A stretch of 64,000 nucleotides of DNA from positions 372,001 through 436,000 of the forward strand of contig JAPYYK010000155.1 of NCBI GenBank assembly GCA_028534125.1, in the 5' to 3' direction. Positions 2,255-59,589 of the stretch are shown here, in pieces (positions within the stretch are counted from its first letter, which is position 1; every line of letters starts with the position of its first letter). A program made the position numbers and the translations under genes. Below the pieces are notes generated by a model that was given only the letters and a program-made list of their open reading frames with translations, made no database searches and had not been told where the DNA came from. The stretch is from Lama glama. Its lineage: Eukaryota.

Positions 2255-2476
2255 CGCCATGGTCTGGCAGTGTGTTTAGCGCTCACCACCATGTGCACCA
2301 GCTTGTTGCTCGTGTACAGCAGCTTCGGCGGCCAGAAGGAGCGGCCCCTGCAGCAGCAGCAGGCAGCGGCGACCGGCAGCGCGCAGCGGTCGGCGGAGAG
2401 CAGCCCCCCGCCGCGTCCCGAGGCTCCCGCGGGACCGCGGCCGCTGGACGGATACCTTGGCGTGGTGGACCACAAG
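2255..2476 (+). CDS. ST6GALNAC5: ST6GALNAC5 coding exon 2 (222 nt, 74 codons): cytoplasmic tail, type II transmembrane anchor, Q4 tract and stem region
   Basis: Pyrimidine tract plus CAG acceptor ending at 2254. Translation RHGLAVCLALTTMCTSLLLVYSSFGGQKERPLQQQQAAATGSAQRSAESSPPPRPEAPAGPRPLDGYLGVVDHK matches ST6GALNAC5 as I recall it. Donor AAG/GTGACA at 2477. The CDS is partial; catalytic exons lie beyond the window. Confidence 0.96.
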
Positions 2477-3620
2477 GTGACAGCTCGCTCGCCAGCTCGC
2501 CCGCCACCCAGCCTGGGGATCCCGCACACCTGAGCTTGCCCCTTTCCCGGGGCTGGGAGGCGCCGTGAGTAGGTGCCATTCGGAGGCTGGAAGGGGGAGT
2601 GGACCCGCGAGGGTGGGATGGCAGAGTTCCTACCTGGTATGAATTTCTTTTTGGAGAAGGATGCAAAGTTTTCAGGGAATAGGGATGAGATGAGTGGACC
2701 CCAAATCCTACTTTCATAATAGGAACCGTCCCTGGAACTAGAATCGCCATGACCCCAGAACTGCAGCTACCGCTGGGTGCTGGGTTCCTGAAGCCTCGGG
2801 TTTGGCGGCCAAGTCGCGCCCTAGTGGGAGGAGAACCAGGAATGGCGCGGGTACCAGTCCGGGCGTACCTCGGACCGGGAACCGGAGGCTGAGGAGCAGC
2901 CAGCCCGCGGCCGCTGCTCAGCCTCGCAGGTTCTTAATCTGATCTCTGCTTCGGATGCTCTGGGCTAAATTCCCACAGCCCTGGGGAGCGGTGCCCAGGC
3001 AGGCGCGGAAGGCTTTAGGCACAAACTCAGCTTTCATTGGCTTGAAACTCATCGTTGAGGGCCTATTTTCCTCTGCCTTCCGGGAAGTCGCTGCATGGTT
3101 TGGCTAATAATTAAAAAGATGAATTTTTAAGAAATTAAGCCTCCTTCCCTTAGAAATAATGAATCTCTGGTTTCAGTGTGTGAAGCCTCTGGGAGAATCC
3201 TAATCAAGTTTCCTAATTCTGAAAAGATATTTTGATACAGTTTAAATGTATTTCCCATCCTTTGAAGCTGCTAGTATATATGTATTTTTAATTTAAACAG
3301 AATTCCACCCTGTATATGCTCTATAAAGCTGGAGAATTTCTTGAAACCACTCAAGTATTCTGCTTTTTGTATTATTAGGTTTTATGGTTGTGAACCAAAG
3401 TGATATTTAGCAGGTGCTGCTTTTGTGTGAAAAGATGACTCTTCCCATGTATGGGAAAGTCACACTTTTTTTAAGTAGCAATCAGAATACTTCTCACTTG
3501 TGCAATGTATAATGCTAAGGATTTTGGAGAGTATGAAAGAGTTGAAGGCAGAACCCAGCCTTTAGGGATCACTGAATGCCTGTAGGGGGAAAAAAAAACA
3601 ATATACCATGAAATGTGGTT

Positions 3621-3660
3621 GGATGGATAGATAGATGACAGATAGATAGACAGATAGATA
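3621..3660. repeat. Imperfect (GATA)n microsatellite
   Basis: ggatggatagatagatgacagatagatagacagatagata. Confidence 0.85.
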
Positions 3661-11870: not shown

Positions 11871-14800
11871 AAAAGAGACCTAAGGTTTTTGCTGCCCAGA
11901 GTTTCCATGCTCTCCCACCCCTCTGTGTTGGTGCAGACAGACAGTCTGAGTGCAGCTTCTGGAACAGCAGAAGGCTTGTGGTTCAAGATTGCCTCTCAAA
12001 GTTAGTGAAGAGAGTTTGAGGAGGATCCCAGATGGCATCCCAACTTTGTCTAATTTTGAACCTCGCTGTGCATCTTAATACCACATACCGACTTGAGCAA
12101 AACAATGGTGTGATGGTTAAGGCTGGAGCAAGCTGTTCTTGGAGACTCCGTAATGCACGCTGGCAACGAATGATGGGAATTAAACCCTCCACCTGCACAG
12201 AGCCAGTGGGATGTGGAATAAACATGCCCAAAGAGGCTTAATTCTGTAACAGTTCTGTTGGGAGAGACTTGATTCTACGATACGCTCTTCAAGGGAGATT
12301 TTATGACATAATAAATCTCACCAGGTATAGATCTGTTGGAAGTATGGGGTGGAGGGTGGTTTCCTCTTCTTTCATTCCCACATAGTTAGAGCAATTATTG
12401 TTCCTTTAAATCACATAAGTTTATTAACAACTTCTAAGAAAAATTAAGCTTCTATTACCCTGGCATCAGAAGGAAAATTTTGTCAAGGGGCAGTCTGATT
12501 CTTAATTCACTCAAAAGCATTTGGTTGGGAGCAAAAAAATGTGTACATTGGAATGAACTCTGGTTTTATGGGGCTTATGTTTGGAGTTCCTTGGCAGTGT
12601 CACCTGCCAGACTGCTATCAGGGTTTCCAAGTCGTCTCCCATTCCCTAAGTAGTGTGTGCACTCTGTGGTGCAAATCATAAAGCTGGTTCATTGCATTTT
12701 TATTCCTCTTGTTGAAAGTTTTGAACAATCAAAGTGCAGGGAGTGATGACATTCTGCTTGTCTTCCAGAACACGGAAAAGGGAAAGGGGCTTACAGGAAT
12801 CCGTGTGTGGTCCCCACTACCCACAAGAAAGAAGCTTTACCTTGATCCTCTAACCATTGTGAATCTCTTGAAGAACTATACCCATTACTCTTCTTAACAG
12901 CTATATGTGGGTTTTGGCTCCTTTTGAAATGTGACGGGGTTTTAATCCAAAAGTTCAGCAATAAAAGTCAGAGAAAGCTGTCATAAGAGAATGGGGCATC
13001 CTGACTGAAACGAGCCTGCAGTAGTGAAATGTAAAGAGCAATAACTGGACCCTGGACCAAGAATAAGGACCAGAGTGAAAAATAAGACCGACTGCTTCTT
13101 CCCGGTTATCAGAGGGGCTCTCTCTCTGGCCACACAGACATGAAATACTGACTGGGTTCTAGAAAGGCAGTAAGGGTGGCTTGTCGTGGGCTGTGTAGTA
13201 GCTACAAAGGGGTCACATCTGTTTGACATTATTACACTTGACTATGATTTGCTGTGCTGTGTGATAACAGAATGGAGCATCAGTGGACTCAGTCGAAAAT
13301 AATTTCCACTGTCTAGGACTTACAATGGTTGCGGTGTTTTTGCTTTTGTTTGTTTTCTGAAATGAGCACCTGAGTGGCCCTCTAAGATGAGTAGGCTCAG
13401 GTCCTCGAGGGAGTTATGAATTCCAGGATTGGCTGGTCTGCACCGTGAAGGGCCATTCTTAATGGTCCACAGAGCATCCTGATGGGGTCTCACCCTTGAG
13501 AAGGTCTGAAGGATGGAAAGGGGGCAGACCTGTATCTTACAGGATATTCTGCCAAGCTCTAAACTAAACCCACCTCAGTCCTGTTTCACGAAGACTATGC
13601 CCGTAGGCCACATTTGAGAGCACGGAATGCCTTCTCTCTGGGAAAACCTGCTCTGCGTCATCCCCACAATAGCATGTTGAAAAAGAAATAAGAGAGAAGA
13701 GAGGCAGAATGTTAGTTCTGAGAAACAAACTTTACCCCCACCCGGTTGTAAATGCGTATATTCTCAGTGTCTTCTCAAAATAGCAAATGGTAAAAAGGAA
13801 ATAGCAGTTATTCAGAAACCTACCACCAAGACATAATTACCGTTGATAACTTAAAGTATTTCCTTAGAGAGCTTTTCGTACATTTCAGATCTGTGTTTCT
13901 TTGACATTTTAATGTACTTCCTGCTTTTATTCATGTAGGTCAGGTATGTGGGGGTCTGTGTGTGTACTGTCTTACAGTATGATGTGATTGGTGATGCACA
14001 GGAAAGCATGAGCTCTGTACTGTTAGATCCTAGTTAAAGACTTATTTTAATAGCTTAAAACCCAGCTATATTCCACCTAGAGTTGGAATAATTAATAAAT
14101 ATGTCTTGATATTTGTGCTGAGGTCTCCGCTTATCAATCCTGAACATGTGGGCATCCCTCACCAGCGTGAACTCCCCTTTCTTTCCCTGTTGTTTACAAC
14201 TCTCCAGCACTTGGCAGGTGTGGTGGTGCTTCCAGCCCTTCCTTTCATCCCCTGCCTGTTTGCTTGGTTACAAAATGTGTTCCAGAATTTTTCACTTTTA
14301 TGAAGCATTCCCAGCAGTCCCTTAATGCTTCTTGTCACTTTTCTCTAAATTCCCTCCAACCCATCAGTAGCTATTTTGGGGGCGTAGCTGGTAGCAAACT
14401 CATGAGCTTCCTGGACTCGGTTAGAGATGATCATCATCTTCATGATCACTGAGTGGGCCCTTGCCAGAGGTATACCTCATGTTGGTCTTCAGTTTCTGGG
14501 TTTCCACTCCAGGATTTAACCCCCTGTCCATCTATGTTACAGGTCTAATTGCTTGTCCATATACGGTACAGGTTCACTTTGACGTAACTGTCTTCCCTAA
14601 AAAGAAATTTTCCAGCACAAATACTTCTAAGTATCACCTTCTTAATCAGCAACCTTTTCTGTATTTCTTTTTTATCTCCTAGTTTTAGACAACATTTTGA
14701 TTCCTTTATCTTCCTTTTACCCAGGTTCTTGAATTCTACGACTGTCCTTTTTGACCCATTTTTCGTGCTCGATGGTGTCTCTGAGCCACACTTTTTTACA

Positions 14801-15109
14801 TTTTTTCAAATAGGTGCTAAGTGTTGTTTCTTGATTTTGGCATAATCTCCGAACTCCCCATTATTCTAACAATTCACAGGTAGAATAATTCTGTCATTAA
14901 AGACATCAGGGCCTGCCTCTCCCATGACAGCCAACTGGCAGGGGTTGTATTTTATACATCTTGGTTTGGTGGCTTCCAGGTAAGGAGATGGGTCAGAGAA
15001 CACGTGATCTCTGCCAATAAGCTCCTTATTAAATCAGCCCTTTGTTTTGGTGCCTGAACTCTCTCCTTTATCCTCTGGAGTGAAGCATCACTCAGTCCTT
15101 CTGATCCAC

Positions 15110-15395
15110 TTTTTTTTTTTTTTGTCGGTTTTGTTTACAAGACACCCACTTTATTTTTTAATTGAATATTGCTGTACAATATGTTATAGGTATACAATAT
15201 GATTCACAATTTTTAAAGGTTATACTCCATTTATAGTTATTATAAAATATTAGCTATATTCCCCATGTTGTTCAATATATCCTTTTAGCTTATTTTATAT
15301 CAAATAGTTTGTACCTCTTAACTCCCCTGCTCCTGTATTGCCCCTTCCCTGTTCCCACACCCCACTGGTAACCACCAGTTTGTTCTCTATATCTC
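15110..15395 (-). mobile_element. 5'-truncated cetartiodactyl-type L1 3' end with TSD and short 3' extension
   Basis: Poly(T) 15110-15123. L1 3'UTR motifs (ttaaaggttatactccatttatagttattataaaatattagctatattcccc; cccactggtaaccac). TSD tctgatcc[a/c]cttttt at 15100-15114 and 15396-15410. Confidence 0.85.
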
Positions 15396-15414
15396 TCTGA
15401 TCCCCTTTTTAAAG

Positions 15415-15885
15415 TGTTTTTATTGTGATGACACATATATAACATAAAATTTGATATTTTAACCATTTTTAAGTGTACAATTCAGTGGCATTTTAATTAA
15501 TTCACAGAGATGTCAATTGTCACCACTATTTCCAAAACATCACTTCAAACAGACGAGTAACCATTAAGTAATGACTCCCCATTCTCCCCTCCCTCCAACT
15601 CCTGGTAAACTCCATTCTACTTTCTGTCTCTATGAATTTGCTATTCTAGATATTTCATAAAGTGAAGTCATTCAATTATTTGTCATTTTATGTCTGACAT
15701 TTCACTTAGCATTATCTTTTCATCCACGTTGAAGCTTGTATCAGAACTGTTCCTTTTCATGGTGGAACAATATTCCATTCAATGGATAAGCTACATTTTG
15801 TTTATCCATTCATCTTTTGATGGGCACTTAACGTTGTTTCCACCTTTTGGCCATTGGAAATAATGCTGCATTGAACACTGGAGTT
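15415..15885 (-). mobile_element. Old L1M (L1MB-like) 3' end
   Basis: ttaaccatttttaagtgtacaattcagtggcatt...ttctactttctgtctctatgaatttg...tttccaccttttggc. Confidence 0.8.
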
Positions 15886-16686
15886 CTCATAGATATTTTT
15901 GAAGTTCTTCCTTCCTTCCTCCTTCCTTTCCCATCCTTGTGACAGCACCTGAGTGTCCAGCTCCCATCACCTCACACCTGTAAAGGCTGCTCTACCCGTA
16001 GCTGCTCCCGCCTTCATGCAAAAAAGTAAAAATTACAGTAAAAAAATAAAGAAGGGGAGAAGCCATTAATTGCACTAATTATATTTGTCTAAAAATAACG
16101 TAAATGTTTTGAAAAATAGAGAGGGGAAATATTCCTTTAATCTTGCCACTTTGGTATAAGTAATGATATAATTTTGGTTTCTTTCTGCCAACTTTTTGCA
16201 TTGCCTTCTTTATCTTTTTAAACCTAAATGTGAACATGTTACGTGTTTTCTTAAAAAGTGTATGTGAGTTAAACCCTGTTTTGCTTCCATTTTGCTGATT
16301 GCCATAAAGATTTCCTTTGGTTAGCATTTGCCTTTTATACATTTTTCCCTCCTATAATTTTTAGTCTTTTTGTATACCTATGTTTTATGTGTGTCCAGAC
16401 CTGCCCCTGTTTGCAGGCCTGAGGCTAGAGTACAGCGGAGGCTTACACACGTCTTGATTGCTTCAGTTGGTAAGTAGGTCTTCATTTAGGAAAGGTTTTC
16501 CAGTTTCAGAGATTTCATCTGACCTATCACAGTTATGGATTTGATCAGGATAATTCTCTTGTACATTTTATTGTTTGATCAATAACTCTTAATGTAAAAA
16601 ATAATGTGAAATTATGTTTGAGAGTTTTATGTGAATAATGAGTGACAAAAGTCTGCCTGCTTGCATTATCTCCAATTTTACAATTT

Positions 16687-16726
<40 letters not shown>

Positions 16727-16730
16727 TACA
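16687..16730. repeat. (TA)n(CA)n compound microsatellite next to a short L1 fragment
   Basis: Direct reading; followed by L1-like tttatccagtcatctgtcagtgg. Confidence 0.9.
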
Positions 16731-17744
16731 GTCTTTATCCAGTCATCTGTCAGTGGCTATTTAAGTTGTTTCCACATCTTGGCCATTGTAAATATTTTTT
16801 AAAATAAATACATGGTTATTATGGTTAATTTAGAAATATAGAAAGGTAGAAGAATAAAATAAAAATCTCCAGGAATTTTCTATACTAAAGATGACATAAT
16901 CATTGTAGAAACTTTCTTAAGGCCTGTCTTCTACGTACATTATTTTTACATAGCTGAGTTCACACTATATGTGTCAATTTAAGCATAATTAAAAGTGGGA
17001 AAGTGGAAGATTGTATAGAGGGGTTGGCAGCAAATAATATCAAGTCTTTCCAATAAAACTCTCTTATTATGCAGACTTCTATTTGTGGAAGGTGAAAATA
17101 TTTTTTGTTTAGTAATTCTTTTAGCACAGTGTCCCAACCATATATTAAAAAAAAAAATTTAGAGTGTTGGAATAGAACAATGTCAGTAATTGATTTAGGT
17201 GGTCATCAAACATGGCAAGAGATTTCATCTGAAGCATAGACTTAAAAATAATAATAAAAGATCTGGTCCTGTGAATGGAATAAAAATTGTAAGTGGAGCA
17301 ACTGAGGAACAACTTTAAGGGCAACTTTACCCCCAAACCAAAGAACACACAAGAAAATGTAATTCATTATTGGATTTCTAACTTTGACTTTAAGCGGGAT
17401 AAGGGAAGCCCTCCCCAACCCCGTCATTTTTACCCTAAATTTCTTCTTACTGTGTTCATTTTTAAAATCTCATTTGGCCAAAATATACATATAAATCAGT
17501 TTTTCAATAGGAGTAGATAGGTGGGTGGACTTTCTGATTCCTTGCCTAGCTGACATTCTTAAGTGTTTTCAATTCGGCTATTAAAAAATTCTTGGGTGAC
17601 AAATTTTAATTTCTAGTCTCTCAGCTAGGTGCACTGGGGGACACAGTAGGACTCTGACTTGGAGCTCCCAGAATACTTGGAAAAGACAGGCAATAAAGCA
17701 ACTGTTCAACAAATTTTTTTTTTTGATCTGATTAGATTTTTAAT

Positions 17745-18860
17745 AACAGCTTTATTGACATTTAACTCATCCTGTCAAAGTATACAGTTCATTGGTTTTT
17801 AGCGTATTCACAGACTTCTGTAATCATGATCACAATCTAAATTTAGAATATTTCCATCACCCCTAAAAGAAACCCGATACTTAATAGCGGTTACTTCTCA
17901 TTCTCCTCTCTCCTCATTGCCTGGCTTCCACTAATCTACTTTCTATTTCTATGGATTACCTATTCTGGAAATTTCATATGAGTTAAATCATTCAACATTT
18001 GGCCCTTTGTGACTGGCTTCTTTCACTTAGCATAATTTTTAAAGCTTCATTCATGTGTCAGACCTTATTTCTTCTCTACTGTTGAATAATATTCCCTTGT
18101 ATATATATATATATATACACACTACGTTTATCCATTCATCAGTTGATTGACATTTGGGTTTTCCCACTTTTTGGCTATTAAAAATACTGAATAATGAACA
18201 TTCCAATACAAGTTTTTGTGTGAATACATGCCTTCATTTTTCCTGGGTGTAAACCTACGAGTGAAATTACTGGGTAATATGGTAATCTAGGGTTTAACCT
18301 TTTGAGTAACTCTGAATTGGTTTTCCAAAGAGGCTGCATCATTTTACCATCTGACCAGCAATGTATGAGGGTTCTAAATGTGTCCACATCCTTGTTGACG
18401 CTTGTTATCATCTGTGTTTTTTCATTCTAGCCATCCTAGTGGGTATGAAGTAGTATCTCATTGCTGTTTTTATCTGCATTAGCCTAGTGAAACATAGGTT
18501 TTCATTTCGATGATGTTAACTTATCCATTGTTTGCCTTTTATCATTTGTATTTTTGGTGTCATAGTTTTAAAAAAACCAAAACATTGCCTAGTCCAAGAT
18601 CATGACGATTTACTTCTGTTTTCTTCTAAGAATGTTATAGCTTTAGCTCTTACATTTAATTTTCTGATCCAGTTCAAACTGTGTGTACGATGTGGCATAG
18701 GGCCCAACTTCATCCTTGCATCTTGCAGGTGGATATATAGCTGTCCCAGCACTATTTGTTGAAAAGAATTATTCTTTCTCCACTCAGTTGCCAAGAGACC
18801 TTGTCAAAAGTAAATTATTCATAAATGCAAGGGTTTATTTATGGATCCTCGTTATATTTC
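17745..18860 (-). mobile_element. Old L1MB-like 3' region with internal deletion
   Basis: agctttattgac...ttccatcacccctaaaagaaaccc...gactggcttctttcacttagcataat...tagccatcctagtgggtatgaagtagtatctcattg. Confidence 0.85.
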
Positions 18861-21289: not shown

Positions 21290-23272
21290 ATGTTGAAACT
21301 AATCAACAAGTTCAGTGAAGTTGTAAGATATGAAATTAGCATACAGAAAGCAGTTGTGTTTCTATACACTAACAACAAAATATCTAGAAAAGAAATAAAG
21401 TAAGCAATCTTGTTCACAATAGCATCAATAAAATACTCAGAAATAAATTAACCGAGGAAGGAAAAGATCTATACAATGAAAACTAGAAGACTTTGATGAA
21501 GTAAATTGAAGAAGACAAATGGATGGAAAGATATCCTGTGTTCATGGAACATAAGAATTAATATCGTTAAAATATACATATTACTCAAGGCCATTTATAG
21601 ATTCAATGCCATCTCTATCAAAATTCCAATGGCATTTTTCACAAAAATAGAAAAACTCTAAAATTTGTATGGCACCACGAGACCTAGAATAGGCACAGCA
21701 ATCCTGAGAAAGAACAAAACTAGAGGCATTGCACTTCCTGATTTCAAACTTTATTACAAAGATATATTAATCAAAACAGTATGGCACTGGCATAAAAATA
21801 AACACACAGACCAAGAGAACATAATATAGAGCCCAGAAATAAACTCCCACATATAACATTAGCTAATACCTGACAAGGGGCCAAGAAGTCTCAATGCGGA
21901 AAGAATAGCCTCTTAAATAAATGGTGCTGGGAAAATGAGATAACCACATTTAGAAAAATTTAGAAAAATGAAATTGGATTCCTAGCTTCACAAAAATGAA
22001 CTCAAAATGGATTAAAGACTTAAACATAAGACTTGAAACCATAAAACTCCCAGAAGGAAAAATAGGGGAAAAGCTATTTGATGTTGACTTGGCAATAAAT
22101 TTTTAGATATGATACCAAATGCATAAACAACAAAATAAAAAATCAACCAGTGGGACTACATCAAACTAAAAAGCTTCTGCACCACGGAAGAAAATCAACA
22201 AAATGAAAAGGCAAACTGGAATGGGAGAAATGGTTTCAAACCATACCAGATAAACAGTTAATATCCAAAATGTATAAATAGCTCATACAACTCAACATTA
22301 AAAAAAGCAAACAGTCCAATTTTNNNNNNNNNNNNNNNNNNNNNNNNNNNNNNNNNNNNNNNNNNNNNNNNNNNNNNNNNNNNNNNNNNNNNNNNNNNNN
22401 NNNNNNNNNNNNNNNNNNNNNNNNNNNNNNNNNNNNNNNNNNNNNNNNNNNNNNNNNNNNNNNNGACTAAAATCAAAAAACAATAAATAACAGGTGTTGG
22501 TGAGGATGTAGAGAAAAGGAAACCCTCATGCACTGTTGGTGAATGTAAACTGGTTCAGCCACTACAGTAAACAGGAGTCTTCAAAAATTTAATCAACTTA
22601 CCATATGATCCAGCAATCCCACTTCAGGTTACATATCCAAAGAAAATGACAACAGCATATTGAAAAGATACAGGTACCCCCATGTTCACTGCAGCGTAAT
22701 TCATAATAGTCAAGATACGGAAATAACCTAAGTGTCCATCAATGGATGAATGGATAAAGGACATGTGATGTATATGAATATAAACATTACTCAGCTATGA
22801 GAAAGAAGGAAATTTTGCCGTTTGCAACAACATAGATGGATCTTGAGAGTGTTATGCTAAGTAAGTCAGACAGAGAAAGATAAATATTGTGTGATATCAT
22901 TTACATGTGGAATCTGAAAAAGCTGAACTCGTGGAAACAGTAGAATGTGGGCTGTGGGGTGGGGGAATTGAGGAGATGATGCTGGTCAAAGGACACATAC
23001 TTGAAGTTAGAAGAGGAATGAGTTCTGGAGATCTAATGCACAGCATTATGATTATAGTCAACAGTACTAAATTATATATTTCAGAGTTGCTAAGAGACCA
23101 GATCTTAAATGTTCACCATCAGAAAGAAGTGTTAATTATGTGGGGTGGTAGAAGTGTTAGCTAATATTACAGTGGTACTCATATTGTAACACACAAATGC
23201 TTCAAATCGATGTGTTGTGCATCCTAAACTTACATTATTTTATGTCAGTTGCATTTCAATTTTTTTTAAAAA
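21290..23272 (+). mobile_element. L1MA-class LINE-1, 3' ~2 kb (degenerate ORF2 C-terminus + 3'UTR), with N gap 22324-22464
   Basis: Classic ORF2 motifs (atagattcaatgccatctctatcaaaattccaatggcatttttcaca; gggactacatcaaactaaaaagcttctgcac; gtgtccatcaatggatgaatggataaag), with multiple stops and frameshifts. Confidence 0.92.
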
Positions 23273-25214: not shown

Positions 25215-27595
25215 TGCAAATCTTATATAAAGAAAGTCCTAAGGAGTATACTAAAAACTGTTAACTAATAAACAAGTTCAGCAAAGTTGCAGGATACAAG
25301 ATCAATACACAAAAGTCAATTTCANNNNNNNNNNNNNNNNNNNNNNNNNNNNNNNNNNNNNNNNNNNNNNNNNNNNNNNNNNNNNNNNNNNNNNNNNNNN
25401 NNNNNNNNNNNNNNNNNNNNNNNNNNNNNNNNNNNNNNNNNNNNNNNNNNNNNNNNNNNNNNNNNNNNNNNNNNNNNNNNNNNNNNNNNNNNNNNNNNNN
25501 NNNNNNNNNNNNNNNNNNNNNNNNNNNNNNNNNNNNATTGTTAAGTTGACAGTACTCCCAAAGTTGATGTTCAGACTCAGTGCAACCCTTACTGGAATCC
25601 CAGCTGGCTTCTTTGTACAAATTGATGAGCTGATTTTAGAATTAAAAAATTGCAGGGGACCCAGAATAACCAAAACAATCTTGAAAAACAAGAACAAATT
25701 GGTGGCTTTCAAATTCCAAAACTTTCCCATTTCAAAACATACTACAAAATGAGAATAATCAAAACAGTGTGTTACTGGCTTAGTGATAGCCATACAGGTC
25801 AATGGAATAGAAATGAGAGTGCAAACTGAAGCCCATGTGTCCATGGTCAACTGATTTTAACAACAGTGTTAAGACCATTGGAGAAAGAATAGTCTTTTCA
25901 ATAGATGATGTTGAGATGACTGAATCATTTCATATGAAAGAATGAAATTGAACCCTTTCCTCATATCTATTTAAAAAATTAACTCAAAGTGGTTCAGAGA
26001 CCTAAATGTAAGATATATGTAAATGTTAATCTACAAAACTCTTAGAAGGAAATTAAGGAATAAATCTGCATGACCTTGGATTTAGCAATGAATTCTTATG
26101 ATACCAAAAGCATGAGAAACGAAAGAAAAAATAAATTGGTCTTCATCAAAATTAAAATTTTCTATAATTCAAAGGATACTATCAAGAGAGTGAAAAGACA
26201 CCTGCAGAATTGGAGAAAAGATTTTCCATTCATATATCTGATTAGAGACTTATATCCAGAGTATATAAAGAACTCTCACAACTCAACAATAAAAAAAAAA
26301 TTTTAATGGACAAAGGATCTAATTAGACACATTTGCAAAGAAGATATATAAATAGACAATGAACGCATGAAAAGATTCCTGACATCATTAGTCATCAGAG
26401 AAATGTGGATCAGAATCACAAGATAACACCCTAGGATGTATCTCATACCCTCCAGGATGGCTGTTTGAAAAAGACAGATGATAGGAAGTGTTGGCAAGGG
26501 TGTGAAGAAATTGGGACCCTCTTAGACTGCCAGTGGGAATATAAAATGGTGCTAGTACTTTGGAAAGCAATCTGGCAATTTCTCAAATGGTCACACATAG
26601 AATTACCGCATGTCCCAGCAATTCCATTCCTAGGTATATATCAATGTAAGTGAACATATCTAGCTACAAACACACTCATCGTAAATGTTTGCATTATTAT
26701 TTATGACAGCCCAAATGTGGAAACAACCTAAATATCTGTTAACTGACCAGTGAATAAACAACACGTGGCATGTCTTATACAATTGAATATTATTTGGCCA
26801 TAGAAAGAATGAAGTACTGATACCCGCTTCCATGTGGATGAGCCATGAAACCATCAAGCTAAGTTAAAGGAGCCAGTCACAGGAAGCCACATACTATGTC
26901 ATTCTATTTCGGAGAAATGTTCAGATAGGCAAATCCATAGAAACAGTAAATGAGTGATTTCTCAGGGCTTGGAGGGGGATTGGTAGCTAAGAGGGCGACA
27001 GCCAGCGGATATGGGATTCCTTTTTGAGATGATGAAAATGTTGAAAGACAGACTGTGGTGATGGTTTCACATATCTCTGAATATACAGGCATACCTCAGA
27101 GATACTGTGGGTTCAGTTCCAGAACACCACATTAAAGCAAATACCAAAGAAAAGGGAGCCACATGAATTTTTAGGTTTCTGGGTGCATATTAAAGGTGTG
27201 TTTACCCTCTATTGTGCACTACCTTTGAGTCAAAAAGAACNNNNNNNNNNNNNNNNNNNNNNNNNNNNNNNNNNNNNNNNNNNNNNNNNNNNNNNNNNNN
27301 NNNNNNNNNNNNNNNNNNNNNNNNNNNNNNNNNNNNNNNNNNNNNNNNNNNNNNNNNNNNNNNNNNNNNNNNNNNNNNNNNNNNNNNNNNNNNNNNNNNN
27401 NNNNNNNNNNNNNNNNNNNNNNNNNNNNNNNNNCTGCCACAAACCTCCAGTTTGTAAGAAAAAAAAAAACCTGTGAAACACTGTAAAGCCAAGCACAATA
27501 AAATGTATGCCTACACTGAAAACCACGGAAGGGCGCACTTTAGGAAGGTGAATTGTATGGCATGTGAATTATATTTCAATAAAGCTGTTACAAAA
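25215..27595 (+). mobile_element. L1MB-class LINE-1 3' region, interrupted by a Tigger1 MITE
   Basis: ORF2 remnants (aagttcagcaaagttgcaggatacaagatcaatac...), and a 3'UTR ending gtgaattatatttcaataaagctgtt. Confidence 0.9.
27086..27513 (+). mobile_element. Tigger1-derived non-autonomous DNA transposon (Tigger1a-like MITE), centre in N gap
   Basis: 5' TIR CAGGCATACCTC after TA (27084-27085); 3' end cacaataaaat-GTATGCCTa; internal gccacaaacct..tttgtaa typical of Tigger1. Confidence 0.88.
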
Positions 27596-29909: not shown

Positions 29910-31570
29910 ATGCAGGACAGCTATCTGTATCTCCACCCCCAGGTCTCTCTCCTAAACTGCAAATCTGCATCTCCAACTACGTACTACCCACATTCCCTTA
30001 AATGCCCCACAGGTACCCTAATTCAGCATGTTCTAAAGAAAACTCATCATCTCAGCCTTCTCCTTCCTTTACTAGTGTTTTGCTATTTCTATTTCCTGTT
30101 AATCACTGTTAAGCCAGTTTCCAAAATCGTATGTCTAGGTATCATCCTTGGATTCTGCCATCTCAGATGCTACACACACCAGTCAGTCACCCGTCACACT
30201 TTCTGCATCCCCACTCGTGCCATCTAGAAGAGACCGCCATCATTCCTCCACTGACTCCTTCAACATGACTCTAGAATTCCTGTGTCCTTCCATCCTTTCG
30301 CCCCTTTTAATCCATTACCACCAGAGTGATCTTCCTAAAACTCAACTCTCTGGTCATCTCTGCACCAACTTGTTGGGTTTCTGTTCTTAGGATAAAATCC
30401 TTAACATGGCTTTTAGGATTTAGTTATGACCTTGACCCTGCTTACTACCCTAGCCCTCTGTGAGTTACTCTTGTCTCTGAACATGCCCAACTATCTTTGG
30501 TGTCAGCAAGGGACAGGAAGGACGACAGAGGCAGCGAGCGGGCTGTCAGATTTGCTAGTAGCCCAGGCCAACTCATAGAAGCCACTAAGTCTAAGATGAG
30601 GCCTTTCTGACGGGTGATGGTGACAAGACATTTCACTGATTTTCACTACCTGCAACTACACTGGCGAGAGAAAGTCCTTCTCTGCAGTTTCTTACATCAC
30701 CAGGCTCTGGGCAGCCCCTTCCGTTGGCCACCCAAGTGCTTCCCCATGTGATCTCACTCTTTGTCCTGAACGCAAAGTCCTCCAACTCGCCCTGAGGTTC
30801 CACTCCACGTTACCCTAGTCTTGGTCACTGTGTGCTTCATTTATATGAGGTTTTGCTCCTTGTTAAGCATGGGGAGGGATGTTTGAGCTCAGGCTTCAAC
30901 TGCTTCACTTAGTGGACTCCAGATGAGTGGATATCCTTGGTTCACCTTAGTTTTAGTCCCAAGATAGTCCCAGTCCTCTCCTTTATATTTTGTTATTCTT
31001 TTCATATATCCGATTACCCAGGAATACTAAAACCATTAATTTAGTGCATTATATTTCTACTACGGCAACACATGAGCTATTTCCAACATGCAAGACGGCC
31101 TGCAGAGCCTAGGGGGCGATATTTCCCCATGCGTGATTAGCCTAAAACCCGCTTTTAATGCACTGGACTTCCTTTCTGATGATACTACTTATTACCTCTC
31201 ACCATTTCCCCTTCTCACCGAAGGCTCCAAGCAGATGAAATTTCTCTCAGGTTCTTATTTTTGCCATGCTGTCTTTCTTCTCAAGACTTTTACACAACAA
31301 ATTGCCTCCAGACTTCCGGGATCATACCTCTCCTCTTTGCTTGGCTACTTCATAATCTCTGCTTAGCCATCCCTCCCTCCCTCCAGAACATCTGGGTTAG
31401 AGCACTTCCTGTGTGCTCCGTGGCCCCTGAACACGCTCTGTTGGGGAGTTTGGAATGTCTGTAATCTTCATGACAGCAGGATGCCAGTCTTCCTTATTCA
31501 CCTTGCATCTGCAAAGCCTGCTGCATACCTGGCTCAGAGGTACTTCATGATCATTCCTTAATGAATGAAT
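29910..31570 (+). mobile_element. Fragmented L2 (two pieces, ~29910-30450 and ~31130-31570)
   Basis: L2 body motifs (ccagagtgatcttcctaaaac; aggataaaatccttaacatggc) and tail aatgaatgaat. Confidence 0.55.
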
Positions 31571-31959
31571 TCACTCTATGAATCATTTAATCAGTGAATC
31601 AGTGAATTTACAATTCTACAGACAGCTTTGATTCTCTAAGAAATTGACATTTTATTTTCTGAAATTATATGTTTCACGTCTTAAAGAATCTGATTTAACC
31701 CTACTTTAAATCATCATGACTGTTTATTAAAACCAGACTCCTGTACAGTAAAATGCATGAGGCATCTAATAATGTGTTTAGAAACCCATTTCAGGCCTCT
31801 CTCAGCATTTTCCATTTTATATGAAATTACTGAAATTTGTGTCTCTGTAACCTGTAAGACATGACGTGCCTCAAGGGCAGTGACCATGTCAAATGCATCT
31901 TTACATCCCCACAACCCCACATCTATGCAGTGTCCGCAGTCAGTAAGTGTATAAATGCT

Positions 31960-32170
31960 TCAGGGAGCCCAGACGTCAAATCCTGGCTTAACTGCTTTCT
32001 ACCTCTGACACCTACCTCTGTACCTCAGCTCTCAAAGCCTCAGTATCTTCATGTATAAAGTGGGAATTCAATTCAAGTAAAAGATCACCTTGCAGGCTTC
32101 TTGTGAAATATTACATAAAATAGAGTGTAAATAAGTACCTGGGACATATAGAAATCATGAATCAACTAGA
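31960..32170. mobile_element. MIR SINE fragment
   Basis: aaatcctggct..aagcctcagtatcttcatgtataaagtggga. Confidence 0.55.
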
Positions 32171-37464: not shown

Positions 37465-40170
37465 AGAAACTGAAAACAAGAAAACAATGAAACGAAAAGA
37501 AAATCAATGAAACAAAAAGCTAGTTCTTCAAAAAAATCAATAAAATTGACAAACCTCTAGCAACACTGGAAGAGATATAAAGAGAGAAGACACAAATCGC
37601 CAGTGTCAGGAATAAAACAAGGATATCACTACAAATCCACATCCATTAAAATGGCAATAGTGGAACAGTATGAGTAACTTTACATTGATACATTTGACAA
37701 CTTAGAAGAAATAAGCCAAGCTCTTAAAAACAATAAACTACCACACCTCAACCTAAACAGTCCTAAAACCATGAATGAACTTAGATTTGTAATTTAAAAG
37801 TTCCAGAAAAGGAAATCTCTGGATATAAATATAATTCACCACTTGAAAATCAATCAAAAAGCTAAAGGAGGAAAACATATAATCATTATCAATTGATACA
37901 GAAGAGCATTTGACAAAATCCTGCACCTGTTTATGATCAAGACTCTCAGCAATCTAAAAATAAGGGGGAACATACTCAACTTAATAAAGAACACCTAAAA
38001 TACATACAGCTAACATCATGCTTAACAACGAGAAGCAATGTTTTCCTTTTAGAGTGGGGAACAAGGAAAGGATGTTTGGCATCATTCTGATGAAGCATAG
38101 GATTGAAAGTTCCAGCCACTGAAGTAAGGCAAGAAAAGAAATTTTAAAAGCATATGTATTGGAAAAGAAGAAATAAAACTGTCTCTTTGCAGATGGCATG
38201 ATTATCTTCATAGGAAATTCCAAAGAATCTAAAAGGAAAAAAAAAAATCATGCTAGAACGAATGAGTCCACTATGGTCACAGGATAAATGATCAACATGC
38301 AGAAATCTGTTGGATTTCTATATGCTCACAATGGCCATGTGGAAATCAAAATCAAAAACTCAGAATGATTTATAACTGCTCCAAAGAAAATTAAATACTT
38401 CAGACTTAACAAAAACATGTAAGAATCCATATGTTGACAACCACAAAATACAGATAGAAGAAATCAAAGAAGACTTAAATAAATGGAAAGACATTATATT
38501 CATGGATTGGAAGACTAAATGTAGGTGAGCCTTTGTAATTCCTGCCAAAATCCAAGCAAAATTGTTTGCAGCCATAGATAAGCTTATTCTAAAATTTATA
38601 TGGAAACACACAGGCCTTAGAACAGCTCAAATGATCTTGCAAAGAAAGATTAAAGTAAGAGTAATCACTCTACCTTATAATGAAGCCCACTATATAGCTA
38701 TAGTACTCAGGATGGTGTGGCATTGCTGGAGGAATAGGCACATAGATCATTGGAATAGAACAGAGAACCCAGATATAGACCCGTACAAATATGCCCGTAC
38801 AAATATTGATTTTCAACAAAGGTGCAAAAGCTACTCAATGAACAAAGGATAGCTTTCTCAACAAATGGTACTGGAGGAATTGGACATCCATAGGCAAAAA
38901 AAAGTGAAACTTTACTTAGACCTCACACCTTATAAATCAGTAACTCAAAATGCATTATAGACTTAAAGTAAAATATAAAAATATAAAACTTTCAGAAAAG
39001 AATATTAGGAGAAAATCTTCAGCATCTAAGGCAAGGCAGAGTTCTTTGTCTTGACACCAAAAGCAAGATCCATACAAGGAAAAATTGATACACTGTACCT
39101 CATTGAAATTGAAAACTTTTGCTCAACAAAGACTGTTAAGAGAGAGAAAAGATGAGATATAATTTGGAAGAAAATAGTTGCAAACCACATATCCAACAAA
39201 GGATTAGTATCTAGACTATATAAAGAACTATCAAAATTCAGCAGTAAAAATGAACTATCCCAGTTAGGAAATGGACAAAGAAATGAACAGACATTTCACT
39301 GAAGCTGGTAGATACAGGGCAAATAAGCACGTGAAAAGATGTTCAGCATTTTTAGTCATCAATTAAATGTAAATTAAAATTGCAATGAGGTATCACTGCC
39401 TACCTACGAGAATAGCTCAATAGAAATTAGTGACAGCACCTAAGCTTCACCAGTAACTGAATCACTCACACATTGCTGGTAGGGATGTGAAACGAAACAG
39501 CTACTTTGCTGTGCCTGACATAGCAAACAGTTCAGTCGTTTCTCATAAAATAGTTACATCATCTAGCAATNNNNNNNNNNNNNNNNNNNNNNNNNNNNNN
39601 NNNNNNNNNNNNNNNNNNNNNNNNNNNNNNNNNNNNNNNNNNNNNNNNNNNNNNNNNNNNNNNNNNNNNNNNNNNNNNNNNNNNNNNNNNNNNNNNNNNN
39701 NNNNNNNNNNNNNNNNNNNNNGTATCCATGCCATGTGATACTACTCAGCAACAAAGGGAACAAATGATTGATATGACAACTCACATGAATCTGCAGGAAA
39801 TTATGCTGAGTGAAAAAAGCCAGTCTTAAGTAACCTACTGGGTGATTCCATTTATATGATACTCTTGAAAAGACAAAATTAAAGAAATGGAGAACAGATT
39901 AGCGGCTTCCAGGAGGTCAGGGAGAAGCAACTGAGAGTGGGAAGGAGAGGTCAGTGTGGCTCTAAAAGAGCAACATGAAGAATCCTTGTGGTGATGAAAA
40001 TGTTTTGACCATTGGTGGCATCGTCAATACCCTGGTTGTGATATCGCACTTTAATTTTGCAAGATGTTACAATTTGGAAGATACTGCACAAAAGGCACTC
40101 AAGATCTCTCTCTATTATTCCATATAACTATATATGAATCTACAAATATTTCAAAACAGAAAGTTAATTT
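37465..40170 (+). mobile_element. L1MC/L1MD-class LINE-1 remnant (ORF2 fragments incl. degenerate RT motif + 3'UTR), N gap 39571-39721
   Basis: aaaatcaataaaattgacaaacctctagc; tttgcagatggcatgatt (FADGM for FADDM) at ~38186; ORF 38562-38852 IDKLILKFIWK...WNRTENPDI is L1 ORF2-like; 3'UTR ttgtgatat..ttttgcaagatgttac. Confidence 0.92.
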
Positions 40171-52331: not shown

Positions 52332-53281
52332 GGTGAGAACATTTGAATTCTACTCTCTTAGCAAATTTCAAGTATACAATGCAGTGTTATTAGTTACAGT
52401 GTTATAGTCACTATGTTTCACATTAGACCCTCAACTCTTACTGATCTTACAGCTGAAAGTTTGTACCCTTTACCAAACTTTTCCTATTCCCCCTCACCCC
52501 CAGGCCATGGCAACCACTTTCCTACTCTCTGTTTATAAGCGTTTGACCTTTTTTTTAAGATTTCACATATAAGTGATATTATGCAATATTTGTCTTCCTC
52601 TATCTTATATCACACAGAATAATGCCCTCAAGTTCCATCGATGTTGTGGCAAGTGGANNNNNNNNNNNNNNNNNNNNNNNNNNNNNNNNNNNNNNNNNNN
52701 NNNNNNNNNNNNNNNNNNNNNNNNNNNNNNNNNNNNNNNNNNNNNNNNNNNNNNNNNNNNNNNNNNNNNNNNNNNNNNNNNNNNNNNNNNNNNNNNNNNN
52801 NNNNNNNNNNNNNNNNNNNNNNNNNNNNNNNNNCTTTGGCTATGTACCCAGGAGTGGGATTGCTTGATCATATGGTAGTTTTATTTAATGTTTTAAGGCA
52901 CTTTTATACTGTTTACCATAGTGGCTNNNNNNNNNNNNNNNNNNNNNNNNNNNNNNNNNNNNNNNNNNNNNNNNNNNNNNNNNNNNNNNNNNNNNNNNNN
53001 NNNNNNNNNNNNNNNNNNNNNNNNNNNNNNNNNNNNNNNNNNNNNNNNNNNNNNNNNNNNNNNNNNNNNNNNNNNNNNNNNNNNNNNNNNNNNNNNNNNN
53101 NNNNNNNNNNNNNNNTTGCAGGTCTTCTTTGGAAAAAAGCCTATTCAGTTCCTCTGCCCATTTTTTAATCGGATGTTTTGGGTTTTTTGCTATTGAGTTG
53201 TATGAGTTCTGTATATATTTTAGATATTAACCTCTTATCAGCTATATGTTTTGCAAACATTTTCTTTTATTCATGGTCTAT
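52332..53281 (-). mobile_element. L1MA-class insertion, truncated at both ends, flanked by ~30-bp direct repeats; two N gaps inside
   Basis: ggtgagaacatttgaattctactctcttagcaaatttcaagtatacaat...ctattgagttgtatgagttc; direct repeats at 52302-52331 and 53282-53311. Confidence 0.88.
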
Positions 53282-55870: not shown

Positions 55871-57169
55871 CTGGCTTCATTGGATTGCTGTAGCTTAGTT
55901 ATATGCTTAAAGAGATTCACTAAAAACTTGTATTTGAAGCATTTAACAGAATTAGCATTTTAATCATGAGTATTCAATTAAATTAAATTCAATAAAATTA
56001 TTATTACTGGGCACAGCTCTAGTTTAAGTAGCAATTGGAGACAAGAGACAGAAGATGTGGCTCTGGTGATCAGATGTCAGAGAGGAAGGACTTCCGAGTT
56101 CAGATAAAGTCACTCCCATTAGTACACAACCTGTCATGAAACCAGAGTTCAATAAACACCAGTTGTTGTTAGCGTTGTTAAGATTATTAGGCTTGAAGGC
56201 TTCGTAAGTAAATAAGACTGACATAATGGAGCACAAGTGTGGTGCTTGTACATATCAAATAATTAATACATGTTATTTCATCCACACACGCGTTAGTGTG
56301 CTTTTTTATGAAAGGCTGTTTCAAGCATGTATGAAATGGAAGGGACCTTAGACGCAATGTCGTCTGGCTCCCTCGGGATGATGAAATTTGAGATCCGCAG
56401 AAGTAAAATAACTTGCCCAAGTCACATAGTGAGTGGTCCTAAAATCTGGTCTCCTGCGCCAGCTGGAAAAGGTCTGCTGTACCCCCCACTCCCTCTCTTC
56501 TAAGTACCTCCTCTTACATTCGATGACAACGATGATCAGCAACGGCCCCACCACAGTGGCAGGCTGCAGACACCGATCCCGTTCACGCCAAGCTGAGTGA
56601 CAAGCGTTGGAGTGCACCCATTCTGCCTTCTCTGGCCCCTCGCCTTTCTGCCACCTGTCTTTTTGAGTTCACAGTGAAAATAAGACACAAACACAACAGT
56701 CTTAGGTCTGCGGATTTCACTGGATGGCTGTGGCTTAGTCGGGCTTGTAGAGATTCACTGAAAACTTTAGTTTGGATCCTCAAAAATGAGCATTTTTATT
56801 GTGAATGTTAAATAAAAATTGTCATTATTGGACACAGCTCTATTTAAATAGCAGGTAGAGACAGGATACAGAAGATGTGGCTGGAGTGACCAGATATCAG
56901 GATTGACAAGTCTGTAAGCCTGGGTGATGGGTCAGATACTGTGTGATTTCTGGTTGTCACACCAGCCTTTTGGATACTATCTCTGCCCCTTCTTAAATAC
57001 CCAGTGTGGTACTCAGTGGTTTGGGCTGAACATGTAACAGGCAGCAATCAGGAAGGTGAGTTGGCAGTTCCTCCTAAAATAGACCTGGATTTATCTTTGT
57101 ATCATATAATTTCCCATGCTGAGGAGCTCACGTTACCATGATCAACATAATAGGCACTGTCATCATGAC

Positions 57170-57969: not shown

Positions 57970-58305
57970 CTTGCCCACTGAAGTGCAGGACTCCCTGGGT
58001 GAGAGGTGTTGGACGGGCCCCGGTGGGGGCGCTATGTCAGTTCTGAGACCGCTAGTGATGTGGGTGGAGAGCTGAGTGAGCGGGAGGGATGGGGAGGCTG
58101 GACACTGAGACTCTGGGGGAAGCGTTTACAGACTCTTCACAGACGCGCTGCTTGTCCGCTTGTTTTCTCGCACGTGCTTCCTGCTTTCCCCTCTTCATGT
58201 GTATGTGGGGGAGGAACGCCCCCCAGATTAGCCTATTTCTTCTAACCTGCAGTATAAGAACAATTCAGACTTCAGAGCCAGCCACTTTAGCATGCGATAT
58301 TTCTT

Positions 58306-58370
58306 TTTTTTATTGAATTATAGTCAGTTTATAATGTGTTAATTTCTGGTGTGCAGCATAGTGATTCAGT

Positions 58371-58405
<35 letters not shown>

Positions 58406-58662
58406 GTATATTTTCTTTCATATTCTTTTTTATTATAGGCCATTACAAGATATTGAATATAGTTCCCTGTGCTATACAGTAGGACCTTGCTGTTTATCTG
58501 GTTTCGTGAAGATTTTCCTTGTAGTTCCCGCTGTACAAGATCTTCTGTCAAAGTTCAGTAGGTATTCTGTGAGAACTGTCCCACGTGTAGATGTATTTTT
58601 GATGTGTTTGTGGGAGAGGGTGAGCTCCGTGTCCTCCTGCTCCACCAACTTGAAGCCCCTCC
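58306..58662 (-). mobile_element. Short L1-derived element: L1 5'-end-like segment fused to an L1 3' end, with TSD
   Basis: 3'UTR part 58306-58497 (atattgaatatagttccctgtgctatacagtaggaccttg); 5'UTR-like part 58498-58662; TSD tagcatgc[ga/ag]tatttctt at 58288-58305 and 58663-58680. Confidence 0.82.
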
Positions 58663-59589
58663 TAGCATGCAGTATTTCTTACATTGTTTTTAACTATTTC
58701 TATTATTGACTTAACTTAACGTCCATTTTTTCTTTACTATCCATTATCGTGCATCTGTCACATGATAAGCCGATGTCCTCGTAGAATTGGGAAGTTCATT
58801 TATGGCAGGCAAACTCATTAAGCTGCACCCCTCAAATTACTCTGTAGCATACCTGGGGAAGTCTCTGCTCCTGATACCAGTGATTGCAAGCATCTGGAGA
58901 AACACCTTCTCCCATTCACACACTTGTGCCTTTCCTCTTTCGGTCTGTGGGACGTCTGCTAGGCTCAGTGTGTGCCGGGCACTGTGCTGGGAGAGGGTGC
59001 TCGGGTGCACAGAGCAGACGTGGTGCAGCCCTTCTCTCAGCACAGCAGTGCATCTGGACCTTGGCAGACTCTGGACTTGGTGTTGTCAGAGCTCCCTTCA
59101 GGGTCTAACTTCATTCCTTTTCTTTTGGACCTTTGTCTTTCCTAGTCTGAATCAGAGCAACCTGGACTCCCAAAAGAGATCTGAAATTGAGGCGGCCATC
59201 CAAGGGCTTCTGGAAATGTGGGACAGTGGGTTAGGGAGATGTCTCCTCTCACCCTCCACCACCACAAACATCTGGAATACCTCTTCCCAACCCAAGTCAA
59301 GGCAGAACTTGACTCAAAATCCACAACCGCCGGTTTGCACTAGATTTATCGCAGTCACATAGCAATCTGAAGAGCTGCCCTTCTAAGGGGCTAATTTAAG
59401 CCATCGTAAGTTCCATGAAGAATAATGCTCTTGTTTCTGCCCAAAGTGACAACAACACTGAGTGGAAATTGTCGCTTCCAGAGAGCTTGCAGCCATTTCC
59501 ACTTGTTTCTCACAAATGACCTCGTCCTTCTTCCTCCAGTCACAACTTGGTTTATTGAGATATTGATCTGCCCTGAGCCACTCCAAGCA

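What the first reader, a model, noticed from the sequence alone, without database searches (positions are those of the whole stretch)
58288..58680. TSD-flanked ~360-bp 'mini-L1': L1 5' end joined directly to L1 3' end (candidate spliced or bipartite non-autonomous retroelement)
Seen: on the minus strand the insert reads gaggggcttcaagttggtggagcaggaggacacggagctcaccctctcccacaaacacatcaaaaatacatctacacgtggg...cacgaaaccAG|ataaacagcaaggtcctactgtatagcacagggaactatattcaatatc...poly(A). It is bracketed by an 18-bp direct repeat (16/18 identical) at a T-rich endonuclease-like site, so it looks like one retrotransposition event. Recalled knowledge: the first ~165 nt resemble the extreme 5' end of laurasiatherian L1 (CAAGATGGCGGAG-type start), and the last ~190 nt are a cetartiodactyl L1 3' terminus; everything between (both ORFs) is missing. 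Inference: the junction falls on a shared AG. As I recall the consensus, the 5' part continues GTAGG and the 3' part is preceded by ...AAATAG, which fits splicing of L1 RNA before insertion (SpIRE-like). Because it keeps the promoter-proximal end and the tail, it could be a member of a SINE-like parasite family. I do not know whether such a family is already catalogued.
Basis: partly seen in the sequence, partly recalled or inferred. Interest (0 to 1): 0.78.

Follow-up and report, generated by a model that had tools for sequence, protein, structure and literature searches.

The report
ORF-less spliced mini-L1 retrocopy
A 357-base insert is one jump of an L1 retrotransposon RNA that had lost its whole coding interior, probably by splicing, and the same join occurs at other places in this genome, so it belongs to a small multi-copy set and is not a one-off accident.

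Summary
On the minus strand, 58662..58306 is a 357-nt insert between 18-bp direct repeats (16/18 identical). It ends in AATAAA plus a short A run.

- **5' part.** The first 165 nt are collinear from nucleotide 1 with published pig L1 consensus 5' ends, including an identical 30-mer.
- **3' part.** The last 192 nt are the terminal L1 3'UTR, which is enormously repeated in this genome.
- **The join.** It fits a GT...AG intron. This genome's own L1 copies read ...AAAATAG just before the 3' part. Pig L1B and L1C read GT just after the homologous 5' breakpoint. The donor GT was not seen in this species.
- **Recurrence.** At least six other contigs with unrelated flanks cross the same join, in each of three DNA runs of near-identical genomes (three organism labels). 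Six more cross it in a relative about 6% diverged. That relative also carries this insert at the same site, so the insertion is old and shared.
- **Other notes.** Three other first-stage notes in this genome describe the same structure.

Verdict: a SpIRE-like product spliced from the L1 5'UTR to the 3'UTR, without ORFs, and therefore mobilised in trans. Whether the copies amplify by themselves like a SINE, or arise again and again from L1 RNA, is open. This is a new variant of a known kind, of moderate interest.

The parts
58663..58680 (-). 5' target-site duplication (AAGAAATACTGCATGCTA), preceded by TGT; the site reads TGT/AAGAAA
   Evidence: 16/18 identical to 58288-58305; the only such pair among 61,074 at this spacing
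58498..58662 (-). L1 5'UTR segment, nt 1 to about 165 of the parent L1, ending in ...AACCAG (donor-side exon end)
   Evidence: collinear with the pig L1B/C/D consensus 5' ends from their first base, about 68% identical by eye, with an identical 30-mer; repeated roughly 50 to 3,000 times by depth; one contig type carries it without the L1 3' part; no Rfam ncRNA
58642..58652 (-). CAAGTTGGTGG, a decayed counterpart of the CAAGATGGCGG box of L1 5' ends (YY1-type box, which sets the start site in human L1)
   Evidence: Sequence compared with the pig consensuses. The YY1 role comes from the literature cited in PMC5860796 and reference 120 of 10.1101/2025.02.02.635956. Function here is inferred
58498..58499 (-). 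AG shared by both parents at the join (the exon-1 end CAG and the intron end ..ATAG)
   Evidence: table 7: about 1,100 L1 contigs per run match up to 58499 and then read, on the minus strand..CTACTATATATAAAAT upstream
58306..58497 (-). Terminal 192 nt of the L1 3'UTR, with AATAAA (58314-58309) and a short A tail
   Evidence: depth of 6-8 million against about 29 for single-copy flank; collinear by eye with the last ~185 nt of the pig L1 consensuses
58371..58411 (.). (TG)7.5(TA)13.5 microsatellite grown inside the L1 3'UTR part
   Evidence: read laying skipped 58366-58421 as a repeat
58288..58305 (-). 3' target-site duplication (AAGAAATATCGCATGCTA)

Best explanation
An L1 transcript started at the normal L1 start site and ended at the normal L1 poly(A) site. 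It lost everything between about nt 165 of its 5'UTR and a point about 190 nt before its 3' end. Both ORFs went with that interior. The most likely cause is splicing from a CAG|GT donor to a ..AAAATAG| acceptor. The 357-nt ORF-less RNA was then copied into the genome by L1 endonuclease and reverse transcriptase supplied in trans. This target-primed reverse transcription at a TGT/AAGAAA site made an 18-bp duplication. The same join is present at several other loci, so this copy belongs to a multi-copy set.

Shown: the anatomy, the L1 identity of both halves, the acceptor AG in this genome's L1, recurrence of the join at loci with other flanks, and the old shared insertion.

Inferred: the donor GT in this species, splicing as the cause, and mobilisation in trans.
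For: - TSDs, EN-like site and AATAAA plus A run.
- The 5' part is collinear with pig L1 consensus 5' ends from base 1. The window's exact 30-mer is found in L1B8. The 18-mer occurs 35 times in the consensus file and, in every passage shown, within the first ~60 nt of a consensus.
- At the homologous breakpoint pig L1B reads ACTGG|GTAGAAC and pig L1C reads ACTAG|GTAAAAC.
- This genome's own L1 copies read ..AAAAT-AG|ATAAAC (table 7).
- A random pair of breakpoints would fit GT..AG about 1% of the time, allowing for the 2-nt slide (my estimate).
- Contigs crossing the join: X1 records 1-6, X4 17-22, X9 25-30 and X15 10-15. Some have no gaps, at 82-89% identity.
- Contigs such as X1 rec 6, X4 rec 22 and X9 rec 30 stop aligning at 58663 and run on for 0.4-4.6 kb of unlike sequence, so they are other loci (table 8).
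- A parent-type contig (X1 rec 7, X4 rec 23, X9 rec 31) carries the 5' part followed by at least 260 nt that is not the L1 3' part.
- Rfam finds no small RNA in the insert.
Against: - The donor GT was not read in this species' own L1.
- The acceptor has a poor pyrimidine tract (..ACTACTATATATAAAATAG).
- The 2-nt AG overlap would also fit a microhomology jump of the reverse transcriptase.
- No RNA evidence for the spliced form was obtained. All runs laid were contigs and the 'RNA?' label of X15 is a guess; its even single-copy flank depth points to DNA.
- No sequence of another copy could be fetched, so their TSDs were not seen.
Confidence: 0.65

Rival explanations
1. A self-propagating, SINE-like (RIME-like) mini-L1 family. 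The deletion happened once or a few times. The retained first 165 nt carry the L1 internal promoter. Copies then bred further copies using L1 proteins in trans. This concerns how the copies spread and is compatible with an origin by splicing.
For: - Several copies with the identical join at different loci in two lineages.
- The element starts at L1 nt 1 and keeps the CAAG.TGG box.
- Three more first-reader notes of the same structure among about 520 noted windows of this genome suggest copy numbers of the order of hundreds. These notes are unchecked.
Against: - Recurrent use of one splice-site pair gives the same picture. Human SpIREs with one junction number in the tens to hundreds without breeding (PMC5860796).
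- No diagnostic substitutions or subfamilies could be examined.
- Depth next to the join (58505-58531) suggests only about 55-95 copies at 80% likeness or better, and that figure includes parent L1s.
- No near-identical young copies were seen among the listed pieces.
Confidence: 0.35
2. The join was made without splicing. During reverse transcription the enzyme jumped from the L1 3'UTR to nt ~165 of an L1 5'UTR at the AG microhomology, or the RNAs recombined. One such product then amplified.
For: - 2-nt AG overlap at the join.
- Template switching is the accepted route for U6/L1-type chimeras (10.1101/2025.02.02.635956).
- The acceptor context is weak.
Against: - The breakpoints fall exactly where GT (pig consensus) and AG (own L1) allow a canonical intron.
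- An AG overlap is what CAG|GT and YAG| sites give on their own.
- Template-switch chimeras usually have variable junctions, while here it is fixed.
Confidence: 0.12
3. A deletion inside a once full-length L1 after insertion, or two separate insertions lying side by side.
For: None beyond the bare structure.
Against: - One TSD pair brackets the whole unit.
- The same join occurs in at least six other contigs with other flanks in each of four runs.
- The relative about 6% diverged has the same short form at this site (records 9 and 16).
Confidence: 0.02

Closest known systems
Human SpIREs (spliced integrated retrotransposed elements; Larson et al. 2018, PMC5860796; earlier Belancio et al. 2006)
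   Same: A retrotransposed copy of a spliced L1 RNA. The donor lies in the first ~100-170 nt of the 5'UTR. The same junction recurs at many loci. The copies are flanked by TSDs.
   Different: The SpIREs studied there are spliced within the 5'UTR or from the 5'UTR into ORF1, and they keep ORF2. Here the acceptor lies in the 3'UTR, so both ORFs are gone. The RNA is only 357 nt and must be mobilised wholly in trans. The host is a non-primate mammal.
RIME/ingi and NARTc/L1Tc of trypanosomes (from my own knowledge, not checked here)
   Same: A short non-autonomous element made of the 5' end and the 3' end of the autonomous LINE, with the coding part missing.
   Different: Those are established high-copy families in protists, and no splice origin is claimed for them. 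Self-propagation is not shown here.
HAL1 (half-L1; listed as L1A6/HAL1_SSc in pig, PMC6501411 Table S1)
   Same: A non-autonomous derivative of L1 that lives on L1 proteins.
   Different: HAL1 keeps the 5'UTR and ORF1 (about 3 kb). This element keeps no ORF at all.
U6/L1 and other 5' chimeras of L1 (10.1101/2025.02.02.635956)
   Same: A foreign-looking 5' segment fused to an L1 3' end inside one TSD pair.
   Different: Here the 5' partner is L1 itself, not a small RNA (Rfam blank), and the junction is fixed rather than variable.

Membership tests
L1-mediated retrotransposition event (TPRT insertion) | Target-site duplication flanking the whole unit | tested here: met
   18 bp, 16/18 identical; unique among 61,074 pairs at this spacing
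L1-mediated retrotransposition event (TPRT insertion) | 3' poly(A) after a polyadenylation signal; T/A-rich cleavage site | tested here: met
   AATAAA at 58314-58309 plus a short A run. The site reads TGT/AAGAAA. The tail is short and merges with the A-rich TSD
L1-derived sequence | 3' part homologous to the L1 3'UTR end | tested here: met
   Depth of 6-8 million against 29 for single copy; collinear by eye with the pig L1 3' ends
L1-derived sequence | 5' part homologous to the L1 5'UTR from nucleotide 1 | tested here: met
   Compared with the pig L1B/C/D consensuses only: identical 30-mer, same start, about 68% identity by eye. This species' own full-length L1 was not read
SpIRE | The missing segment is bounded by GT...AG in the parent L1 | tested here: inconclusive
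   AG is shown in this genome's own L1 copies (table 7). GT is shown only in pig L1B/L1C; pig L1D has GC there
SpIRE | The same junction at several independent loci | tested here: met
   At least 6 other contigs per run cross the join and their flanks differ (table 8). Their TSDs were not seen
SpIRE | The spliced RNA is detectable | not tested
   Reads were laid on contig runs. No raw RNA reads were available
SpIRE | Splice within the 5'UTR or from the 5'UTR into ORF1, as in the SpIREs studied by Larson et al. (PMC5860796) | tested here: not met
   The acceptor lies in the 3'UTR, about 190 nt from the end, and both ORFs are absent
SINE-like / RIME-like non-autonomous LINE derivative | Both termini of the autonomous partner, and no ORF | tested here: met
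SINE-like / RIME-like non-autonomous LINE derivative | Amplification from its own copies (private shared mutations, subfamilies) | not testable with these tools
   No sequence of another copy could be fetched (blank or chance; the look-up of encoding contigs closed)
SINE-like / RIME-like non-autonomous LINE derivative | Own promoter active in the retained 5' part | not tested
   Only the decayed CAAGTTGGTGG box is visible
U6/L1-type template-switch chimera | The 5' partner is a small non-coding RNA and the junction varies | tested here: not met
   Rfam: no family near threshold. The junction is fixed

The most novel reading that the evidence does not exclude
The mini-L1 copies form a self-propagating, ORF-less family in the RIME/ingi style. 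The family would be driven by the retained L1 5' promoter. It would serve as the L1-dependent short parasite in a genome that otherwise lacks a young tRNA- or 7SL-derived SINE. The window has none in 64 kb. A camelid-like host is my guess, not a result.
Probability: 0.25. Interest if true: 0.65.

Novelty: new variant of a known kind. Interest (0 to 1): 0.4.

Why it matters
L1 proteins strongly prefer the RNA that encoded them. A 357-nt L1 RNA with no ORF that still reached several, perhaps hundreds of, genomic sites therefore records how often trans-mobilisation succeeds when the RNA carries both L1 termini. It extends the human SpIRE picture, in which splicing is a drain on L1, to a non-primate mammal and to a splice that removes both ORFs. 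If the copies breed by themselves, it would show a route by which a LINE gives rise to its own SINE-like parasite in a mammal. The shared old insertion is also a clean presence/absence marker for the two lineages.

Tried and rejected
- **Copies in the window:** none of either half.
- **Small-RNA origin of the 5' part:** Rfam gave only two weak miRNA-model hits far below threshold.
- **Fetching other copies or a full-length L1:**
  - Protein word search with the antisense pseudo-ORF over the 5' part was blank.
  - Pattern scans for the junction and for the 5' part were blank in viral contigs and in metagenome contigs (both scans spent).
  - Of the two genome-contig scans, one was blank. The other gave one hit, in a Corynebacterium contig, which is a chance match to bacterial sequence.
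- **L1 ORFs in the window as a bridge to full-length L1s:** only one old ORF2 C-terminal piece, at 38562-38852.
- **DNA words in paper texts:** none found.
- **Literature on ORF-less mini-L1 families in mammals:** nothing in the held library. Belancio 2006 and 2008 are not held.
- **Steps deliberately left out:** That comparison was made by eye on the text. No consensus of the copies was built.

Full report
**1. What is there**

Read on the minus strand, the stretch runs in this order:
- flank ending ...AAAAACAATGT
- AAGAAATACTGCATGCTA (58680-58663)
- a 357-nt insert (58662-58306)
- AAGAAATATCGCATGCTA (58305-58288)
- flank

The two 18-mers agree at 16 of 18 positions. Among 61,074 pairs of 18-mers at the same spacing in the window, only this pair reaches that score. 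The insert ends in AATAAA followed by a short A run that merges into the A-rich repeat. The site reads TGT/AAGAAA, a T/A-rich site of the kind the L1 endonuclease cuts. A (TG)n(TA)n microsatellite has grown at 58371-58411. The insert is A-rich (41% A) and has no ORF of note on its sense strand. Neither half recurs in the window.

**2. The 3' half (58497-58306) is the end of L1**

I laid Logan contigs of four runs on 58000-58960 at 80% likeness. Summed depth was 6-8 million over 58429-58494 and 0.1-0.6 million over 58297-58362. The single-copy flank gave about 29 (table 2). By eye this half is collinear with the last ~185 nt of the pig L1 consensus sequences printed in supplement 1 of PMC6501411. 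In that paper's Table S1 the pig L1B-D 3'UTR is about 217-277 nt (most 250-277), so the segment lies wholly inside the 3'UTR.

**3. The 5' half (58662-58498) is the very start of L1**

The pig consensuses L1B1, L1B3, L1B5, L1B8, L1C1, L1C2, L1D1 and L1D10 all begin with the same layout. It runs GG..(9-12 nt)..CAAGATGG(C/T)GG...CACGCTCACCCTCTCCCACAAACACA(T/A)CAAAAA..ACATCTACA..CACAGAAC...ACTGAATGCTGGCAGAAGAAC.... The window reads GGAGGGGCTT-CAAGTTGGTGG...GGAGCTCACCCTCTCCCACAAACACATCAAAAATACATCTACACGTGGGACAGTTCTCACAGAATACCTACTGAACTTTGACAGAAGATC...

- The window's exact 30-mer 58626-58597 is found in L1B8.
- Its 18-mer 58620-58603 occurs 35 times in the consensus file. In every passage shown it lies within the first ~60 nt of an L1 consensus.
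- By eye the 165 nt match L1B3 at about 68% with a few short gaps. I did not run this alignment in a tool, because foreign sequence may not be typed.
- The insert starts 10 nt before the CAAG box; the pig consensuses start 9-12 nt before it. The cDNA therefore reached the normal L1 start site.
- Rfam finds no small RNA in the insert.
- In this genome the 5' half is itself repeated, roughly 50 to 3,000 copies depending on the bin, taken as depth divided by 29. The peak at 58594-58626 may be inflated by its A/CA-rich composition.
- One contig type (X1 record 7, X4 record 23, X9 record 31) carries 58662-58495 and then runs on for 260 nt or more that do not match the L1 3' part. This is the parent-type arrangement.

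**4. The join**

About 1,100 L1 contigs per run match the stretch up to 58499 and then diverge. Their loose-end consensus reads, on the minus strand..TTAACAGATACAAACTACTATATATAAAAT upstream of AG-ATAAACA (table 7).

On the other side, the window's ...TCTTCACGAAACCAG lines up with the pig sequences as follows:

| Pig consensus | Sequence at the homologous breakpoint |
|---|---|
| L1B | ...TCTTGACATAACTGG\|GTAGAAC |
| L1C | ...CGTGACATTACTAG\|GTAAAAC |
| L1D | ...ATTGG\|GCAGAAC |

The join is therefore where a CAG|GT donor and a ..TAG| acceptor would place it. The 2-nt AG overlap is what such sites produce by themselves. The parent-type contigs stop aligning 3 nt past the G, which fits GTA but does not prove it, because the letters were not shown. 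A TTAAC about 30 nt upstream of the AG could serve as a branch point, but the pyrimidine tract is poor. I estimate that a random breakpoint pair fits GT..AG about 1% of the time. The donor GT in this species remains the missing piece.

**5. The join recurs**

Table 8 lists the longest pieces. In each DNA run they are contigs that cross 58497/58498 with 30-56 nt on the 3' side and 125-165 nt on the 5' side, at 82-89% identity:
- X1 records 1-6
- X4 records 17-22
- X9 records 25-30
- X15 records 10-15, four of them without any gap

Contigs such as X1 record 6 (627 nt), X4 record 22 (2,420 nt) and X9 record 30 (4,780 nt) stop aligning at 58663, exactly the element's 5' end, and then continue with sequence unlike this locus. 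These are other insertion sites with the same 5' terminus.

Three further first-stage notes in the same genome describe the same structure (s1-857556, s1-862779, s1-862046). They are unchecked leads. Four such notes in about 520 noted windows would suggest copy numbers of the order of hundreds.

**6. Age**

The three DNA runs with different organism labels (X1, X4, X9) cover the 5' border with 0-3 differences. Run X15 has flanks about 6% diverged (24 differences in 411 nt; 15 plus 4 gaps in 259 nt). It crosses both borders of the insert (records 16 and 9). The insertion therefore predates the split of those lineages. No empty site and no full-length L1 was seen at this locus. The two differences between the TSDs, and at least 9 majority differences in the 5' half (table 3), fit that age.

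**7. Mechanism**

The best reading is a spliced L1 RNA (5'UTR donor to 3'UTR acceptor, removing about 6 kb including ORF1 and ORF2) that L1 proteins copied in trans. This works like the human SpIREs (PMC5860796). It is not one of the kinds studied there: those splice within the 5'UTR or into ORF1, keep ORF2, and are called dead ends.

How the multi-copy set arose is open. Either L1 RNAs were spliced the same way many times, or a mini-L1 kept enough of the internal promoter (the CAAG.TGG box region, decayed here to CAAGTTGGTGG) to breed copies of itself, as RIME does with ingi in trypanosomes. The second comparison is from my own knowledge. A reverse-transcriptase jump at the AG microhomology is a weaker alternative. 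Deletion after insertion is excluded by the recurrence.

**8. Host**

The window has no ruminant, cetacean or pig SINE motif and no tRNA-like SINE head. Its internal repeats are all old. Camelid genomes are reported to have only about 1.6-1.8% SINE, nearly all MIR (PMC8605555), which would fit. The taxon is still my guess and the run names were coded.

**9. Limits**

- All laid runs were contigs, so depth is only a rough copy count and nothing can be said about expression.
- No sequence of another copy or of this species' full-length L1 could be fetched.
- I could not check Dfam or Repbase, so the unit may already be listed there for this species.

Noticed in passing
window 58371-58411: A (TG)7.5(TA)13.5 microsatellite has expanded inside the L1 3'UTR part, where the pig consensuses have only a short GTATATAT run. 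Read laying treated 58366-58421 as a repeat and skipped it.
   Followed up: partly
window 58671-58672 vs 58296-58297: The two TSD copies differ by a swapped dinucleotide (..TACTGC.. against ..TATCGC..) rather than by two scattered changes. The second copy thereby carries a CpG.
   Followed up: no
window 1144-1275, 22324-22464, 25325-25536, 27241-27433, 39571-39721, 52658-52833, 52927-53115: Seven stretches of N (1,194 bases in all). Several lie inside A-rich or T-rich blocks that look like old L1.
   Followed up: no
window 38562-38852 (+): A 96-aa ORF that reads like the C-terminal part of an old L1 ORF2 (my recognition; Pfam gave no hit). It lies in a 4-kb block that is A-rich on the + strand (36-40 kb).
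   Followed up: partly
window 15574-18448, 21992-22306, 25974-26949, 38942-39250, 52834-53265: Weak (66-80%) direct and inverted similarities link these blocks, probably fragments of the same old repeat families. There are no young interspersed repeats anywhere in the 64 kb.
   Followed up: no
window 55876-56080 and 56716-56900: A 205-nt direct repeat at 71% identity, about 840 nt apart and 1.4 kb from the insert. Its nature is unknown.
   Followed up: no
window 1000-4000: A GC-rich block (52.7% over 2001-4000) with many long ORFs on both strands and no Pfam match. It looks like a CpG island.
   Followed up: partly
window 14001-16000 and 30001-32000: Strong negative GC and AT skews (about -0.2 and about -0.13 to -0.22) in two 2-kb blocks. 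Not examined.
   Followed up: no
L001 4101-4122 (Corynebacterium silvaticum contig): The 22-nt degenerate L1 5' pattern hit a bacterial contig. The surrounding sequence is ordinary bacterial DNA, so this is a chance match and not host contamination.
   Followed up: yes
same genome, other windows (notes s1-857556, s1-862779, s1-862046, s1-859807): Other first-stage readers flagged three more 'mini-L1' units of 350-410 bp with an L1 5' end joined to an L1 3' end. A fourth note describes an ORF2 fragment joined to the distal 3'UTR. Several L1 splice or deletion products may therefore be fixed in this genome.
   Followed up: no
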